Shown: positions 5,061-52,497 of the stretch, in pieces
How positions within the stretch are numbered: the stretch's first letter is position 1
Layout: each line of letters opens with the position of its first letter
Assembly: GCF_006345805.1 (NCBI RefSeq)
Contig: NC_043011.1
Location: forward strand, 47,256,464 to 47,320,463
Direction of reading: 5' to 3'
Length of the DNA stretch: 64,000 nucleotides
From: Octopus sinensis
Lineage: Eukaryota
Notes under the pieces: model-generated
Seen by the model: only the letters and a program-made list of their open reading frames with translations
The model's database searches: none
Told to the model about the DNA's origin: nothing
Made by a program: the position numbers and the translations under genes

Positions 5061-5586
5061 AAAATTTAAATACATGCATTTGCATATGAGCATGTTCATA
5101 TTGGTGTGCTACTGTTTAAATACCCAAGCACAACACACACACACACACATACATATGTAGTCAAACGTACAAACATACAAACCAAGTAAAAGTAGATGAA
5201 TTTTGTCAGTTTAAATGATGATTATTCTAATATTCCAATCAGCTTATTGTATTCTCGCATATAGCTGAGTATTCTAAAGACACATATACCTTTAATGTAA
5301 TCCTCATGTAGAATCAGCATAACAGAGTGTGTGACAATGCCGGCCCTTTCCATAACAGATACAGTCTTTCCAACAAAGGAATCCTGTTCCTATCTACCCA
5401 GTTTTACCCACAAGGCTCCGGTTGACTTAAGGCTATTTTAAAAGATGCTTGGCCAAGATGCCTCGCAGTGAAATTGAAACAGTGACCTTATAATTGCAAA
5501 GCAAATTTCTTGAATGCTAATTCTTTGTATGTAGCTCTAAACACAAAAACATGTACATTAAATGTACTTATTATAAATGACATGTC

Positions 5587-6253
5587 TTGGCATCACTCAC
5601 CAAGTCCTTTGTGAGCCGCTCTCCGGCTATCTATCTGCGGCTTTATATAGCTATGGTTCAAACTCACTTGGAATTTGCATCACTGGTCTGTAACCTCTAT
5701 CTTGCCCAGGATATTAATCATCCAGAAGCTGTTCAGCGACGTGCAACCAAGAGAATACCCTCCATCAGGTATTTGACATATTCTGAATGCCTTACTTCCC
5801 TGGGCATGGCTACGTTGAAACTCTGATGTCTGGCAGCTGACTTGGCAGACACCCATAAAATTATTAACCATCTTACCAACAATAACTCTGAGCACCTTTT
5901 CAAACACCACCTGTCTAACACCCGTGGACATGTTTACAAAGTCAGAAAACAGTACAGTTCCCATGACTTTTGGAAACATTTTTTCATGCTAAGAGTTGCT
6001 GAAGCATGGAACAAACTGCCAGCATCAGTTGTTAGTTGTCGGGGCACTGCATACTTCAAAACTTCCATGCTTCCTGAGATTCACCAACACTACACCTGAT
6101 TTTCTCCCCTCCATACACACGCAAGCATTTATCTGACTCATACACTGTTCACTTTCCAGACATTTGTACATTACTGCATATACTTTATACGCACTTTTGA
6201 CAAGTTGTGGTGCACCTGAGCACTGCGTACAATAATTTCATTATTACTATTAT
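5587..6253 (+). mobile_element. CR1/L2-clade LINE 3' fragment (RT C-terminus plus 3' UTR), decayed
   Basis: Translation gives LYIAMVQTHLEF...VQRRATKRIP...Y..CL..LG...L, an in-frame TGA at 5824-5826, then NTRGH..K...HFF..RVAEAWNKLP. These are typical CR1 C-terminal motifs; (ATT)-like tail near 6240. Confidence 0.85.
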
Positions 6254-10813: not shown

Positions 10814-11158
10814 AATTAGAAAAAAACACCTTTTATCAATTCAAAATGAACAATTAAATTACACCATCTAGAAAATTACATATAATAGAAATATTAAAAT
10901 TAAAATAACAATAAAATACCAATGATTAAGTAAATTGCAAAAAAATAATAAAAACGTATATATTTGGTAGAATAATGACACGTGTTTCGTGGCTATATTT
11001 AAGAAATGATTATATACGTTTTTATTATTTTTTTGCAATTTACTTAATCATTGGTATTTTATTGTTATTTTAATTTCAATATTTCTATTATATGTAATTT
11101 TCTAGATGGTGTAATTTAATTGTTCGTTTTGAATTGATAAAAGGTTTTTTTTCTAATT
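10814..11158. repeat. Fold-back element, ~148-bp inverted arms, 48-nt spacer with 3' half of a hammerhead
   Basis: 10814-10962 is a near-perfect reverse complement of 11011-11158; minus strand of the spacer reads atagccac-GAAA-CACGTG-TC-attattc. Confidence 0.85.
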
Positions 11159-20146: not shown

Positions 20147-20399
20147 TTAACGAAAGTGCTGTAACAGATTATCAGGGTTCCAAGCTTGTAACTGAGATGA
20201 GACCTATGGAACCATTTTAGATTTCCAATTTAGCAGTTGTATATTTGTGAAAGAGGACAATAAATGCCAAGGCATAACAATTATCTTAGGTCATATACAT
20301 TATGATTCTTAAATTAGTTGACGTTTTACAGACCTCAACTAATTTAAGAATCATAACGTATATGATTTGAGATGTTTCTTATGCCTTGAGTTCATATAT

Positions 20400-20730
20400 C
20401 ATCATCATCATCATCATCATCACCATTTAACGTCCGCTTTCCATGCTAGCATGGGTTGGACGGTTCAACTGGGGTCTGGGAAGCCAGAAGGCTGCACCAG
20501 GCTCCAGTCTGATCTGGCAGTGTTTCAACAGCTGGATGCTCTTCCTAACGCCAACCACTCCGTGAGCGTAGTGGGTGCTTTGCTTTTTACATGCCACCGG
20601 CACAGGTGCCAAGACGGGGCTGGCAGACGGCCACGATCAGATGGTGCTTTTTACGTGCCACCGGCACAGGGACCAGACGAAGCTGGCAGATGGCCATGGT
20701 CGGATGGTGCTTTTTACATGCCACCGGCAT
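20400..20730 (-). mobile_element. RTE-type 3' end fragment
   Basis: (CAT)n, then tttaacgtccgctttccatgctagcatgggttgg, with internal repeats of tttacatgccaccggcac. Confidence 0.75.
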
Positions 20731-23204: not shown

Positions 23205-23426
23205 TTTAGATTGACTGAGGTAGTAATACGAGTCATAAAAGTCATTATTATTAGATGATTATAAGATGATAATAAAGTAAGAGAACAAAACGAACCAATG
23301 GTTTATGCAAAGCTATTCATCGTTTGCGTGAACCATTGGTTCGTTTTGTTCTCTTACTTTATTATCATCTTATAATCACCTCATAATAATGACTTTTATG
23401 ACTCGTATTACTACCTCAGTCAATCT

Positions 23427-23429
<3 letters not shown>
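23205..23429. repeat. Fold-back element, ~107-bp arms, 11-nt loop
   Basis: 23205-23311 is the reverse complement of 23323-23429 with about 6 differences; loop gctattcatcg. Confidence 0.9.
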
Positions 23430-28572: not shown

Positions 28573-28604
<32 letters not shown>

Positions 28605-28606
<2 letters not shown>

Positions 28607-28823
28607 TGTTGGCTGAATTTTCTTGAGAACATTTCTTAGTGGTAAGACCATAGCAGATCTACTTCTAGCATAAGGGTTGTCCACATAGCGGTCATCCCTC
28701 TCATATGTATGTAATATAAATATAAACAGATACATGTATATGTATATATGTGTATGTGCAATTATGTGAGTGGATGTTTGTATGTATATAAATATATGCA
28801 TATGTATGTATACCTATATATGT

Positions 28824-28855
<32 letters not shown>

Positions 28856-29072
28856 GGTGTTGGCTGAATTTTCTTGAGAACATTTCTTAGTGGTAAGACC
28901 ATAGCAGATCTACTTCTAGCATAAGGGTTGTCCACATAGCGGTCATCCCTCTCATATGTATGTAATATAAATATAAACAGATACATGTATATGTATATAT
29001 GTGTATGTGCAATTATGTGAGTGGATGTTTGTATGTATATAAATATATGCATATGTATGTATACCTATATAT

Positions 29073-29121
<49 letters not shown>

Positions 29122-29385: not shown

Positions 29386-29421
<36 letters not shown>

Positions 29422-29582
29422 CACATACACACATATGTATGTACTTATGTATATGTATTAATGCGTGTATGTATGTAGGGATGTATCTGTTATCAGAATG
29501 CACAACTGTTACCTGAAGGCATAAAATTGATTAAGGAAGCGAGAAGTTTGACTGAATAAACAAACACTAACAGAGACATATG

Positions 29583-29613
<31 letters not shown>

Positions 29614-29775
29614 TCATACAACCACAGACATAGAATATACAAGGTTTCTATTTGTTGTTATTAAAAAAAAAAAAAAGCTGTTTCCATCCTATGATTGTCT
29701 GTCTAACTGGCAGGCTTGCAGGCTGGAAACATGGAGTTCTTTTAAGCAGTTTCATTGTCGGTTGGTGAAAGACCA

Positions 29776-29850
29776 ATGTGAGATTTTCTAGAGGTTCACA
29801 CCCATCGACTGTTGTGACTGATGGGTGTGAAACTCCGGAACCACTCACAT
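29776..29850. ncRNA. Candidate pri-/pre-miRNA hairpin, strand unresolved
   Basis: Symmetric ~32-position stem (7 bp, 3 mismatches, 4 bp, 1 mismatch, 3 bp, 1 mismatch, 12-13 bp) with an 11-13-nt loop, in non-repetitive sequence. Confidence 0.5.
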
Positions 29851-30131
29851 CGCATCAAAGGTTTGTATCAATCTGCAGGCTCACACACTAACGCATGCAG
29901 TTCTCTTTATTGCATCTCACTGCACTCCTTTACATTTGGTATCCATCTTGAAATCTTATTGACATCGTTGCTGTGGTGCAATTTTACCATGCTTCAGTTT
30001 GTCGCTCCAGATTTTCCTTTTATTTATTTATTTATTTTTTGCTTTTCAGTAAAACAAGAATTAAAATAGAGTAAAATCAAAGATTTTTGCTGTTGATTAA
30101 ATTTTTTTATCCTTCTTTTAAATTTTTTTAG

Positions 30132-30245
30132 GTTTCTTTATCCGAAGATTTGTCCAAAACTTTAGACAGTCTGTATTTCAAAGCAAAAGCCATAATGCAG
30201 AAATACATCAAAAGAGAAAACAAAAAGACAACAGAAGAAAAAAAA
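30132..30245 (+). CDS. Candidate internal exon (114 nt), protein unidentified
   Basis: Pyrimidine tract ...aaattttttag|GTT and AAA|gtaagc. Phase 0 reads VSLSEDLSKTLDSLYFKAKAIMQKYIKRENKKTTEEKK; a second frame is also open. Confidence 0.4.
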
Positions 30246-30400
30246 GTAAGCTTTCATAAAATTAATTGTTTCATATTCCTTTTGTTTACCTGAATATGTC
30301 CGGATTCTGAAAGATTATTAAACATAATGCTTGTATATTTTGTATAACGACGTACGGACAAAGGGTAAGTATATGTGAGTCTATATATGCAGTCTATATA

Positions 30401-30810
30401 ATTTCTTTATTGCCCACAAGAGGCTAAACATAGACGGGACAAACAAGGACAGACAGAGGAATTAAGTCAATTACATCGACCCCAGTGCGTAACTGGTACT
30501 TAATTTATTGACCTCGAAAGGATGAAAGGCAAAGTCAACCTCAGCGGAATTTGAACTCAGAATTTAGCAGCAGACGAAATACCTATTTTTTACTGCCCAC
30601 AAGGGGCTACACACAGAGGGGACAAACAAGGACAGACAAACGGATAAAGTCGATTATATCGACTCCAGTGTGTAACTGGTACTTATTTAATCGACCCTGA
30701 AAGGATGAAAGGCAAAGACAACCTTGGTGGAATTTGAACTCAGAACGCAGCAGCAGACGAAATACTGCAAAGTATTTTGCCCGGCATGCTAACGATTCTA
30801 CCAGCTCACC
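30401..30810 (-). mobile_element. Dimeric 'gtcgactttgcc' family SINE
   Basis: Reverse complement of the 26865 copy. Confidence 0.8.
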
Positions 30811-32015: not shown

Positions 32016-32226
32016 TTGTGTATTTAAATATGAAATAGTAACAGCTTTAGTATAATAAATAACATTAACCACATAGACTTAACATATATGCTTTGTGTAT
32101 TTGCCAGTAGGCTGCTGTTGGCACAGTAGAGTACTTTGAAAGCATACATACTCCACTGTACTAATAGCAGTCCATTGGCAAAAACATGAAGCATTTACAT
32201 TAAGTTTATGTTGTTAATGATATATG

Positions 32227-33614: not shown

Positions 33615-33869
33615 TAAATATATGGTAATAAATTAAAATAATTTATTACCAGTGGTTAGTATACATGAATAAATGTCATAAGACAAAACATATTTTGTAA
33701 AATATAAGAGTGTATAAAATATTTTCATATACAAAGAGGAAACCATTGTGTATAAAGATATTTATATAGTCTTATATTTAAAAAAATATGCTATGTCTTA
33801 TGACTTTTATTTATGCATGCTAACCACTAGTAATGAATTATTTTAATTTATTACCCTTATATTTACGAT
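33611..33869. repeat. Fold-back element, ~99-bp diverged arms
   Basis: atcgtaaatatatggtaataaattaaaataatt... versus ...aattattttaatttattacccttatatttacgat. Confidence 0.8.
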
Positions 33870-40061: not shown

Positions 40062-40147
40062 AATATATAGCATATATTTAGAGGCTATAGTAGAAGACAC
40101 TTCGGCAAGTGTCTTCTACTATAGCCTCTAAATATATGCTATATATT
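40062..40147. repeat. Perfect 41-bp inverted repeat with 4-nt loop
   Basis: 40062-40102 is the exact reverse complement of 40107-40147; loop cggc. Confidence 0.95.
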
Positions 40148-42395: not shown

Positions 42396-42806
42396 GGCAT
42401 AGGAGTGGCTGTGTGGTAAGTAGTTTGCTTATGAACCACATGGTTCCGGGTTCAGTCCCACTGTGTGGCACCTTGGGCAAGTGTCTTCTACTATAGCCTC
42501 GGGCTGACCAAACCCTTGAGTGGATTTGATAGATGGAAACTGAAAGAAGCCCGTCGTATATATGTACATATATATGCATGTGTGTGTATATGATTGTGTG
42601 TCTGTGTTTGTCTCCCCACCCCCACCCCAACATCGCTTGACAACCGATGCTGGTGTGTTTACGTCCCCATAACATAGCGGTTTGGGAAAAGAGACCGATA
42701 GAATAAGTACTAGGCTTACAAAGAATAAGTCCCGGGGTGGATTTGCGGGACTAAAAGCGGTGCTCCAGCATGGCCACAGTCACATGACTGAAACAAGTAA
42801 AAGAAT
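42393..42806 (+). mobile_element. Full-length CORE-type SINE
   Basis: Complete head, CORE, linker and tail. Confidence 0.9.
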
Positions 42807-42826
42807 AATATATAGATATATAGATA

Positions 42827-43236
42827 TACTCTTTTACTCTTTTACTTGTTTCAGTCATTTGACTGCAGCCATGCTGGAGCACCGCCTTTAGTCGAGCAAA
42901 TCGACCCTGGGACTTATTCTTTGTAAGCCCAGTACTTATTCTATCGGTCTCTTTTGCTGAACCGCTGAGTGACAGGGACGTAAACACACCAGCATAAGAT
43001 GTCAAGCAATGCTAGGGGAACAAACACAGGCACACAAACACACACATACATATATACATATACATATATACGACAGGCTTCTTTCAGTTTCTGTCTACCA
43101 AATCCACTCACAAGGCATTGGTCGGCCCGGGGCTATAGCAGAAGACACTTGCCCAAGATGTCACGCAGTGGGACTGAACCCGGAACCATGTGGTTGGTTA
43201 GCAAGCTACTTACCACACAGCCACTCCTGCGCCTAT
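42827..43236 (-). mobile_element. Full-length CORE-type SINE, inverted relative to its neighbour
   Basis: Reverse complement of 42393-42806 with a 20-nt spacer. Confidence 0.9.
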
Positions 43237-45986: not shown

Positions 45987-46560
45987 ATCACATAACGACA
46001 CTAGGCCTCTGTCATTTACAATGTAAGGGTTCCAGTCAATCTGATCAAGGAAACAGCCTGCTTGTGAAATTAACATGCAAGTGGCTGAGCATTTGACAGA
46101 CACATGTACCCTTAACATAGTTTTCATAGTCTGTACTCTTAACATAGTTTTCATAGTATGTACCCTTAACATAGTTTTCATAGTATGTACCCTTAACATA
46201 GTTTTCATAGTATGTACCCTTAACATAGTTTTCATAGTCTGTACTCTTAATATAGTTTTTATAGTATGTACCCTTAACATAGTTTTCATAGTATGTACCC
46301 TTAACATAGTTTTCATAGTCTGTACCCTTAACATAGTTTTCCTAGTATGTACTCTTAACATAGTTTTCAAAGTATGTACACTTAACATAGTTTTCAAGAA
46401 GATTCATTGTGACACAAAGTGTGACAAGGTTAGCCCTTTGAAATACAGGTACAACTCATGCCAGCTGAGTGGACTGGAGCAACATGAAATAAAGTGTCTT
46501 GCTCAAGAACCCAAAACATTGCCAGGAATTGAACACACAACCTTATGATCATGAGCCAAA
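45987..46560 (-). mobile_element. tRNA-head SINE fragment carrying an internal minisatellite
   Basis: Collinear with the reverse complement of 60820-60974 on both sides of the array. Confidence 0.75.
46105..46397. repeat. 27-bp minisatellite, 11 units
   Basis: tgtacccttaacatagttttcatagta repeated head to tail. Confidence 0.95.
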
Positions 46561-51931: not shown

Positions 51932-52497
51932 TTGGGTTGTCTGGAAAGTTCATGCCAATTTATAGTAGCTTACATTTCGACTTATTTTAGAACATGGTTG
52001 AGTCCATAAAATAGGATTTGACTACACCTCCATTTAGAGCACAGTTTAAGCTATCTTTTCGTTGAAGAAGGTTTATGTTCCTATAACCTGTGTTAATTAT
52101 GTAACCCCTTAAAATGGAAGATAAGAAAGTTCATTTTCGGCACTTGATGCTTTGGGACCCGGGCAAAAATTGCTGCAGCTCGGCTGGGATGTGTTATCCC
52201 ACTCTCCATATTCACCAGATATTGCTCCTTTGGATTTCCACTTATTCAGGTCTCTGCAGAATAGTCTTAATGGTAAAAATTTCCATTCCTTGGATGACGT
52301 AAAAAGATACCTTGATGAATTCTTTGCCATGAAACCACCACAATTCTGGGAAGAGGGTATTTTCAAGTTAAAGGAAAGATGGAGACACATTGTGCAACAA
52401 AATGGTTCATATTTGGTTGATTAAAAATGTAATGGCAAGTATTTATTGACCTTTCTCTTTCCTTTGAAAATCGGCACAAACTTTCCGGACAACCCAG
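51932..52497 (+). mobile_element. Internally deleted mariner element, 566 bp
   Basis: ~30-bp TIRs (ttgggttgtctggaaagttcatgccaattt, ~25/30) with TA on the right. N-terminal MEDKKVHFRHLMLW is joined to the C-terminal QKLLQLGWDVLSHSPYSPDIAPLDFHLFRSLQNSL...GSYLVD*. Confidence 0.92.

What the first reader, a model, noticed from the sequence alone, without database searches (positions are those of the whole stretch)
29776..29850. Pri-miRNA-like hairpin in unique sequence, matching no conserved miRNA I recognise
Seen: a register-perfect stem with no bulges over 32-34 positions, a 12-bp perfect upper helix (ttcacacccatc/gatgggtgtgaa), a 7-bp basal helix (atgtgag/ctcacat) and an 11-13-nt loop. This is the ~35-bp geometry Microprocessor prefers. 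On the minus strand, a 57-nt precursor 29840-29784 puts UG at -14/-13 and CACC (CNNC) at +17. It gives 5p UUCCGGAGUUUCACACCCAUCA and 3p AUGGGUGUGAACCUCUAGAAAA. The plus strand has UGU at the loop start and would give a 55-nt precursor. Established: coleoid cephalopods have many lineage-specific miRNA families. It lies ~280 nt upstream of the candidate exon at 30132.
Basis: partly seen in the sequence, partly recalled or inferred. Interest (0 to 1): 0.75.

Follow-up and report, generated by a model that had tools for sequence, protein, structure and literature searches.

The report
Ordinary decaying inverted repeat in octopus DNA
The 75-base hairpin is real and has the shape of a microRNA precursor, but this stretch of octopus-like DNA holds a comparable hairpin about every 10 kb, and nothing beyond shape suggests it is a gene.

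Summary
The hairpin at 29776-29850 exists as described. It has two 32-nt arms in perfect register (25/32 identical, no indels), a 12-bp perfect upper helix, a 7-bp basal helix and an 11-13-nt loop. It folds far better than shuffles on both strands, and whole-window shuffles never reach it.

Nothing beyond shape supports a microRNA. There is no Rfam match and no target-site duplication, and it is single-copy in the window. The neighbouring "exon" has no protein or Pfam support. Among non-repetitive sequence, five other hairpin loci in these 64 kb are at least as stable. One of them, a stronger look-alike, lies 2.3 kb away. Extrapolated, that is roughly 10^5 such hairpins per octopus genome, against 164 annotated miRNA genes. 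The arm mismatches look neutral. The two motifs arise by chance at about 4% of positions once strand and register are free.

Conservation, genome-wide copy number and small-RNA expression could not be tested. No cephalopod orthologue or read set was reachable.

Most likely this is a neutrally decaying local inverted duplication. I put the chance of a genuine lineage-specific miRNA at about 6%.

The parts
29776..29807 (.). Left (5' on +) arm of the inverted repeat, 32 nt: ATGTGAGATTTTCTAGAGGTTCACACCCATCG
   Evidence: It aligns in one register with the reverse complement of the right arm: 25/32 identical, mismatches at arm positions 7, 8, 9, 13, 14, 18 and 31.
29808..29818 (.). Spacer / apical loop. 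It is 11 nt if the terminal G-U/A-C position is counted as stem, or 13 nt (29807-29819) between the two perfect 12-mers.
29819..29850 (.). Right arm of the inverted repeat, 32 nt: CTGATGGGTGTGAAACTCCGGAACCACTCACAT
29795..29806 (.). Perfect 12-bp upper helix, left half (TTCACACCCATC). Its partner is 29820-29831 (GATGGGTGTGAA).
   Evidence: these are the only two occurrences in the window at one mismatch or fewer.
29820..29831 (.). Perfect 12-bp upper helix, right half. It contains GGGTGTGA, a 7/8 match to the T-box half-site AGGTGTGA.
   Evidence: The core GGTGTGA occurs 9 times in the window.
29776..29782 (.). Basal 7-bp helix, left half (ATGTGAG). Its partner is 29844-29850 (CTCACAT).
29784..29840 (-). 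It has 2-nt 3' overhangs by construction, UG at -14/-13 and CNNC at +17.
   Evidence: verifies the sequences and motifs. There is no expression evidence.
29771..29856 (-). Extended minus-strand stem: two extra pairs on the basal helix, a 1-nt bulge, then 3 more pairs, 33 bp in all, -43.0 kcal/mol.

Best explanation
This is a single-copy, imperfect 75-bp inverted repeat in non-coding, repeat-rich Octopus-type DNA. It has two 32-nt arms that are 78% identical, with an 11-13-nt spacer.

It most likely arose as a local inverted duplication, by a template-switch-type replication error or a similar event. That step is inferred, not shown. It has since been accumulating substitutions neutrally.

It is one of a graded series of such palindromes in this window, which range from 100% to about 78% arm identity. 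If the region is transcribed, either strand would fold into a hairpin that meets the geometric requirements of Drosha and Dicer. So it is raw material for a microRNA, but there is no evidence that it is a microRNA gene or has any function.
For: - The inverted repeat is real and non-random.
- The arms differ only by substitutions, and complementarity ends abruptly at both arm ends, as expected for a copied block.
- The 7 mismatches are not clustered: P=0.42 for their span and P=0.18 for a perfect run of 12 or more.
- The transition-type mismatches that give G-U on one strand and A-C on the other split 2:2 between strands. This count includes the first flanking position and is read directly from the list. 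It gives no sign of selection for RNA pairing on one strand.
- The window holds many other inverted repeats at different stages of decay: 40066-40145 (perfect 37 bp), 10821-11152 (98%), 23205-23429 (96%), 20286-20365, 33624-33855 (87%) and 32101-32180.
- Six non-simple-repeat hairpin loci in 64 kb fold at -37 kcal/mol or better per 80 nt, with the candidate the weakest. That scales to roughly 0.9-2.6 x 10^5 per 2.3-2.8 Gb octopus genome (sizes from PMC10700109), against 164 annotated miRNA genes (PMC9699675).
- In primates, more than 6,000 template-switch hairpins yielded at least 18 miRNA genes, about 0.3% (PMC10710096).
- There is no Rfam family, no protein or Pfam signal nearby, and no TSD or outer TIR.
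Against: - The hairpin satisfies every purely structural miRNA criterion: about 28-33 bp, symmetric internal loops only, a loop of at least 10 nt, MFEI 1.05 and low ensemble diversity.
- On the minus strand it carries UG at -14/-13 and CNNC at +17.
- Coleoids are known to have gained many lineage-specific miRNA families.
- Neutrality is inferred from seven mismatches in a single sequence, which is weak.
- The template-switch origin is not demonstrated, because no outgroup sequence was available.
Confidence: 0.72

Rival explanations
1. It is a genuine, unannotated octopus-lineage microRNA gene. On the minus strand it would give 5p UUCCGGAGUUUCACACCCAUCA and 3p AUGGGUGUGAACCUCUAGAAAA; alternatively the plus strand is used. 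It would be processed by Drosha/DGCR8 and Dicer.
For: - The geometry is compatible with Microprocessor on both strands.
- UG at -14/-13 and CNNC at +17 are present on the minus strand.
- It is unique within the window, with no TSD.
- Octopus has 90 novel families, and the authors say their count is an underestimate (PMC9699675).
Against: - The base rate is about 0.1-0.3% for hairpins of this quality.
- The motif pair arises by chance at 4.3% of positions given free choice of strand and register.
- There is no wobble strand bias and no mismatch clustering.
- No Rfam family matches.
- The supposed host exon is unsupported, so transcription is unknown.
- An equal or better look-alike lies 2.3 kb away, whereas novel octopus families are reported never to co-occur on a scaffold.
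- No expression or conservation data were reachable.
Confidence: 0.06
2. It is a relic of a mobile element: the fused terminal inverted repeats of a miniature or foldback transposon, or an internal hairpin of a dispersed repeat that is low-copy or old.
For: - The window is saturated with SINE, LINE and mariner debris and long inverted repeats.
- O. vulgaris is about 69% repetitive.
- Foldback-like palindromes occur nearby.
Against: - There is no second copy in 64 kb of the window or in 20.6 kb of O. vulgaris locus L008.
- No target-site duplication of 4 bp or more abuts the arms, and there are no outer TIRs.
- An 11-13-bp interior is too small for a transposon.
- Genome-wide copy number could not be measured.
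Confidence: 0.12
3. It is a DNA-level cis-element: two inverted T-box-like half-sites (TCACACCC ... GGGTGTGA) bound by a T-box transcription factor dimer or two monomers.
For: Each arm carries a 7/8 match to the Brachyury half-site AGGTGTGA, in the same head-to-head orientation as the Brachyury palindrome TCACACCTAGGTGTGA (PMC4010391).
Against: - The half-sites are about 21 bp apart instead of abutting, and each has a mismatch at the first position.
- The core GGTGTGA occurs 9 times in the window. Any inverted repeat duplicates whatever motif one arm contains.
- This does not explain why the complementarity extends over 32 nt.
Confidence: 0.03
4. It is a structured RNA of another kind: an ADAR editing substrate or another regulatory intronic hairpin.
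For: It forms a stable duplex of about 28-33 bp on either strand. Coleoids edit RNA heavily (PMC9699675 abstract).
Against: - No transcript evidence exists, and no exon is supported nearby.
- The duplex lies wholly in non-coding sequence, so no recoding could result.
- No Rfam family matches.
Confidence: 0.03

Closest known systems
Canonical animal pre-/pri-miRNA hairpins, in particular the 90 novel cephalopod, coleoid and octopus miRNA families of Zolotarov et al. 2022 (PMC9699675; MirGeneDB)
   Same: It is a single stem-loop of about 32-36 stem positions with symmetric mismatches, a loop of at least 10 nt, MFEI about 1.05 and randfold-type significance. A 2-nt-overhang duplex can be drawn, and UG and CNNC are at canonical offsets on the minus strand.
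   Different: There is no evidence of expression, processing or conservation, and no sequence match to any curated family. The arm divergence pattern looks neutral. Comparable hairpins are common locally.
Template-switch-mutation (TSM) hairpins: inverted repeats created in one replication event, a few of which become miRNAs (Monttinen et al., PMC10710096 and PMC8794818)
   Same: It is a short inverted copy in exact register, with sharp ends and substitution-only differences, in non-coding DNA. It has a suitable hairpin geometry that need not be functional.
   Different: A TSM origin needs an ancestral or outgroup sequence showing the pre-event state, and none was available. With 22% arm divergence, the event would be old if it happened.
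MITEs and foldback transposon relics
   Same: It is an inverted repeat in a transposon-rich region.
   Different: There is no TSD, no additional copy in the sequence held, and essentially no interior.
Brachyury / T-box palindromic binding site (TCACACCT-AGGTGTGA)
   Same: The half-site orientation is the same, and each half matches 7/8.
   Different: The half-sites are separated by about 21 bp, the motif is frequent in the window, and the palindrome extends far beyond the motif.

Membership tests
Canonical animal miRNA gene (MirGeneDB-type criteria) | An imperfect hairpin with at least 16 paired positions between the two putative mature arms and a loop of at least 8 nt | tested here: met
   There are 28 bp (+ strand) or 28-33 bp (- strand), and the loop is 11-13 nt.
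Canonical animal miRNA gene (MirGeneDB-type criteria) | Folding energy significantly better than shuffled sequence | tested here: met
   z is -4.66 and -5.75, with 0/200 shuffles as good. However, five other complex-sequence loci in the window are at least as stable.
Canonical animal miRNA gene (MirGeneDB-type criteria) | Reads of 20-26 nt from both arms, with homogeneous 5' ends and 2-nt Drosha/Dicer offsets | not testable with these tools
   No small-RNA read data were accessible.
Canonical animal miRNA gene (MirGeneDB-type criteria) | Presence in a second species, as required by Zolotarov et al. for a novel octopus family | not testable with these tools
   No orthologous cephalopod locus could be reached. 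The protein-anchored routes failed. The only octopus locus obtained, L008, is a paralogous transposon copy.
Canonical animal miRNA gene (MirGeneDB-type criteria) | Primary-sequence processing motifs (basal UG, CNNC, apical UGU) | tested here: inconclusive
   UG at -14/-13 and CNNC at +17 are present on the minus strand. The chance of both is 0.7% at a fixed position and 4.3% with 2 strands x 3 registers. On my hand reading of the sequence, the plus strand has UGU in the loop but no well-placed UG or CNNC.
Known RNA families (Rfam 15, including conserved miRNA families) | Covariance-model score at or above the family's gathering threshold | tested here: not met
   There were 0 gathering hits in the window. 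The best local scores are mir-181 at 16.6 bits vs 45.5, MIR395 at 14.7 vs 56 and MIR5565 at 14.7 vs 80.
Annotated octopus miRNAs (MirGeneDB Ovu/Obi sets) | Sequence identity to a deposited precursor or mature miRNA | not testable with these tools
   The paper's held supplements contain no miRNA sequences: the let-7 and miR-1 controls were also absent. Full-text searches for the arm sequences found nothing relevant.
MITE / foldback transposon | Target-site duplication flanking the terminal inverted repeats | tested here: not met
   No exact flanking direct repeat of 4 bp or more abuts the arms. The only one found is an offset AAAG.
MITE / foldback transposon | Multiple dispersed copies | tested here: inconclusive
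   There is no second copy in the 64-kb window or in 20.6 kb of O. vulgaris. The whole genome was not searchable.
T-box (Brachyury-type) palindromic site | Two AGGTGTGA half-sites, inverted and abutting | tested here: not met
   The half-sites are GGGTGTGA (7/8) and are separated by about 21 bp.
Template-switch-generated inverted repeat | An inverted copy of adjacent sequence appearing in one step relative to the ancestral state | not testable with these tools
   This needs outgroup genomes. The sharp ends and substitution-only divergence are consistent with it but not diagnostic.

The most novel reading that the evidence does not exclude
The hairpin, possibly together with the stronger look-alike at 32101-32181, is an unannotated, recently evolved octopus-specific miRNA born from a local inverted duplication. 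That would be a caught-in-the-act example of de novo miRNA birth in the lineage with the largest invertebrate miRNA expansion.
Probability: 0.06. Interest if true: 0.4.

Novelty: new member of a known kind. Interest (0 to 1): 0.15.

Why it matters
As it stands it matters little. It is one of an estimated 10^5 miRNA-shaped hairpins in an octopus genome, and it shows why hairpin geometry plus post-hoc motif placement is not enough to call a miRNA in a palindrome-rich genome.

If small-RNA data did show precise processing, it would add one young lineage-specific miRNA to the coleoid expansion described by Zolotarov et al. It would also give a concrete locus for studying miRNA birth from inverted duplications outside primates.

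Tried and rejected
1. **Rfam.** The whole window at gathering thresholds and the local region at E<=10 gave nothing meaningful.
2. **Literature search for the arm sequences.** The 11-mers hit only mouse Gapdh primers. The specific 13-mers hit two unrelated papers.
3. **Supplements of the octopus miRNA paper.** The arms were absent from both the PMC and bioRxiv versions, but so were the let-7 and miR-1 controls. The negative is therefore uninformative.
4. **Protein-anchored routes to orthologous DNA.** All were negative:
   - exact look-up of 7 local ORFs;
   - a chimeric six-frame query of 29620-30330.
5. **Transposon ORF query.** It gave an O. vulgaris LINE fragment. Its locus L008 is paralogous, not syntenic.
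6. **Metagenome scan for the two perfect arms.** It returned 7 contigs in two groups that share only the 12-14-mer. Group B is an 80-bp tandem repeat with a tRNA-like segment from another organism. I rejected both groups as non-homologues.
7. **Pfam.** The X-joined ORF packs gave no family.
8. **MITE reading.** Rejected for lack of a TSD, outer TIRs or extra copies.
9. **T-box palindrome.** Kept only as a weak lead.
10. **Mismatch clustering.** My first impression was that all mismatches cluster in the middle of the stem. Simulation did not support it (P=0.42 and 0.18).

Full report
**Observation**

The 12-mer TTCACACCCATC occurs in the window only at 29795-29806 (+) and 29820-29831 (-), even allowing one mismatch.

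The two 32-nt arms, 29776-29807 and 29819-29850, align in a single register. They have 25/32 identical bases and no indel, a 7-bp basal helix and a 12-bp perfect apical helix. Complementarity stops abruptly outside the arms, where only 1 of the next 15 positions matches.

As RNA, the 95-nt plus strand folds at -37.3 kcal/mol (z -4.66). The minus strand folds at -43.0 kcal/mol (z -5.75). None of 200 dinucleotide shuffles did as well in either case. Two dinucleotide shuffles of the whole 64-kb window produced best 80-nt hairpins of only -28.6 and -31.1 kcal/mol. The inverted repeat is therefore real and not a composition artefact.

Standard indices are miRNA-like, with MFEI 1.05-1.06, 28-33 bp and low ensemble diversity.

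**What organism and context**

The window is 35% GC and crowded with (TA)n and (TG)n tracts, SINE-like repeats and long inverted repeats.

A LINE reverse-transcriptase fragment at 5583-6128 is 82% identical in protein, and 91% in DNA, to a copy annotated in Octopus vulgaris assembly GCA_951406725.2. SINE copies match that locus at up to 95%. The coleoid framing is therefore reasonable. That locus (L008) is not syntenic with the window, however.

The 'candidate exon' at 30132-30245 has two open frames. Neither matches any protein in a collection that includes annotated O. vulgaris proteins. No stop-free stretch of 30 aa or more that I scanned between about 23.8 and 35.2 kb hits Pfam; I left out most SINE-derived stretches and those around 31.5-32.5 kb. 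Whether the hairpin is intronic, and which strand is transcribed, is unknown. ARAGORN finds no tRNA in the window.

**Is it a known RNA?**

Rfam 15 gives no gathering-level match anywhere in the window. The permissive local scan gives only chance-level scores: mir-181 at 16.6 bits against 45.5, and MIR395 and MIR5565 at 14.7 against 56 and 80.

Full-text searches for the arm sequences found only mouse Gapdh primers and two unrelated papers.

The supplements of the octopus miRNA paper that are held here contain no miRNA sequences at all, because my let-7 and miR-1 controls were also absent. The absence of the arms there says nothing. The annotated octopus set sits in MirGeneDB, which I could not query.

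**Is it a repeat or a transposon?**

Word-7 BLAST of 29400-30150 against the window finds only the flanking simple repeats. For the hairpin itself it finds one 22-nt, 82% chance match. There is no hit in L008. There is no target-site duplication next to the arms and no outer terminal repeat.

A scan of JGI metagenome contigs for the two perfect arms returned seven contigs. They share only the 12-14-mer with the window, and their loops and flanks differ. One group is an 80-bp tandem repeat with a tRNA-like T-arm segment from some other organism. These are not homologues.

Genome-wide copy number in octopus could not be measured.

**How unusual is it locally?**

Without filtering, the 40 most stable 80-nt windows are nearly all simple-repeat palindromes.

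I then restricted the scan to windows with at least 75% distinct 4-mers, a single stem-loop and at least 24 pairs. Sixteen loci reach -30 kcal/mol and six reach -37. The candidate (-37.5) is sixth. Ahead of it are:
- a perfect 37-bp palindrome at 40066-40145;
- parts of near-perfect long inverted repeats at 23276-23355 and 20286-20365;
- a SINE-derived hairpin at 20446-20525;
- a hairpin at 32101-32180.

That last one is built in the same style, with symmetric mismatches and no bulges. It is single-copy in the window and stronger: over 100 nt it folds at -47.4 kcal/mol with z -8.7 on the plus strand, and -42.5 with z -6.5 on the minus strand.

Two to six such loci per 64 kb scale to about 0.9-2.6 x 10^5 in a 2.3-2.8 Gb octopus genome (sizes from PMC10700109). 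Against that stand 164 robustly annotated miRNA genes (PMC9699675).

An independent literature yardstick points the same way. In primates, more than 6,000 suitable template-switch hairpins gave at least 18 miRNA genes, about 0.3% (PMC10710096).

**Signs of selection?**

The seven arm mismatches are at positions 7, 8, 9, 13, 14, 18 and 31. They are not significantly clustered: P=0.42 for their span and P=0.18 for a perfect run of 12 or more.

Transition-type differences give G-U on one strand and A-C on the other. They split 2:2 between the strands when the first flanking position is included, which I read directly from the list. I see no preference for keeping RNA pairing on one strand.

The UG+CNNC pair occurs at 0.7% of random window positions for a fixed strand and register. 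With the two strands and three registers a reader can choose among, it occurs at 4.3%. That is a modest likelihood ratio, not a signature.

Zolotarov et al. also report that novel octopus families never co-occur on a scaffold. Two novel miRNAs 2.3 kb apart would be atypical.

**Explanation**

The best-supported reading is an old local inverted duplication that is decaying neutrally. It is one of a graded series of palindromes in this region with arm identities from 100% down to about 78%. The copied-block anatomy, the local abundance and the absence of any functional signal are shown. The generating mechanism, template switching during replication as described in PMC10710096 and PMC8794818, is inferred.

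If transcribed, the hairpin could enter the miRNA pathway. Starting from a prior of about 0.1-0.3% and allowing generous likelihood ratios for symmetry, loop size, uniqueness and motifs, I put a genuine miRNA at about 6%.

The other rivals are less likely:
- **Transposon relic, about 12%.** It has no TSD and no extra copies.
- **T-box-like palindromic site, about 3%.** The arms carry GGGTGTGA against the half-site AGGTGTGA (PMC4010391). But the halves are about 21 bp apart, and the core occurs 9 times in the window.
- **Another structured RNA, such as an ADAR substrate, about 3%.**

**Limits**

The three tests that would decide the matter could not be run: small-RNA reads, cross-species conservation and comparison with MirGeneDB. 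No cephalopod orthologue or read set was reachable with the tools.

**Verdict**

The miRNA interpretation is possible but unsupported and improbable on base rates. Interest is low.

Noticed in passing
window 32101-32181 (folded as 32091-32190): A second single-copy, bulge-free, imperfect hairpin lies 2.3 kb downstream and is stronger than the flagged one. The plus strand folds at -47.4 kcal/mol (z -8.7) and the minus strand at -42.5 (z -6.5). By shape alone it is a better miRNA look-alike, and it illustrates how common such hairpins are here.
   Followed up: partly
window 40066-40145: A perfect 37-bp palindrome with a 4-nt loop (-60 kcal/mol) lies in non-simple sequence. It looks like a very young inverted duplication or foldback.
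   Followed up: no
window 10821-11152, 23205-23429, 42625-43017, 33624-33855, 20286-20365: There are long or near-perfect inverted repeats: arms of 142 nt at 98%, 107 nt at 96%, 184 nt at 87%, 95 nt at 87%, and about 33 bp. Together with the flagged hairpin they form a graded series of palindromes at different stages of decay.
   Followed up: partly
window 30132-30245: The 'candidate exon' has a good acceptor and donor and two open frames. But it matches no protein in the collection and no Pfam family, and its acceptor region is a 21-bp tandem duplication (30097-30138). It may be non-coding, unannotated or not an exon.
   Followed up: partly
window 5583-6128 and 52125-52421: The first is a LINE (jockey-like) reverse-transcriptase fragment, 91% identical in DNA to a copy in O. 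vulgaris GCA_951406725.2. The second is a mariner/SETMAR-type transposase C-terminal fragment, about 65-71% identical in protein to insect and other animal copies. Together they support an Octopus origin for the window.
   Followed up: partly
window 28576-29107 and 30401-30765: There are two tandem duplications close to the hairpin. One has a 251-bp unit, 2.1 copies and 98% matches. The other has a 183-bp SINE-like unit, 2 copies and 85% matches.
   Followed up: no
window 46045-46400: A short-period tandem array gives long repetitive ORFs on both strands (repeated ...TLNIVFIVC... and ...MKTMLRVHT...).
   Followed up: no
L003, L004, L006, L007 (JGI Ga01263xx contigs); L001, L002, L005: Unrelated metagenome contigs contain hairpins with exactly the same 12-bp arms (TTCACACCCATC/GATGGGTGTGAA). 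In the Ga01263xx group the arm lies in an 80-bp tandem repeat with a tRNA-like T-arm segment, and L007 has a 35-nt-arm palindrome. The other group has a perfect 42-bp palindrome. Similarity to the window stops at 12-14 nt.
   Followed up: partly
window 29795-29802 and 29824-29831: Both arms carry a 7/8 match to the T-box half-site AGGTGTGA, in Brachyury-palindrome orientation but about 21 bp apart. The core GGTGTGA occurs 9 times in the window, so this is probably coincidence.
   Followed up: partly
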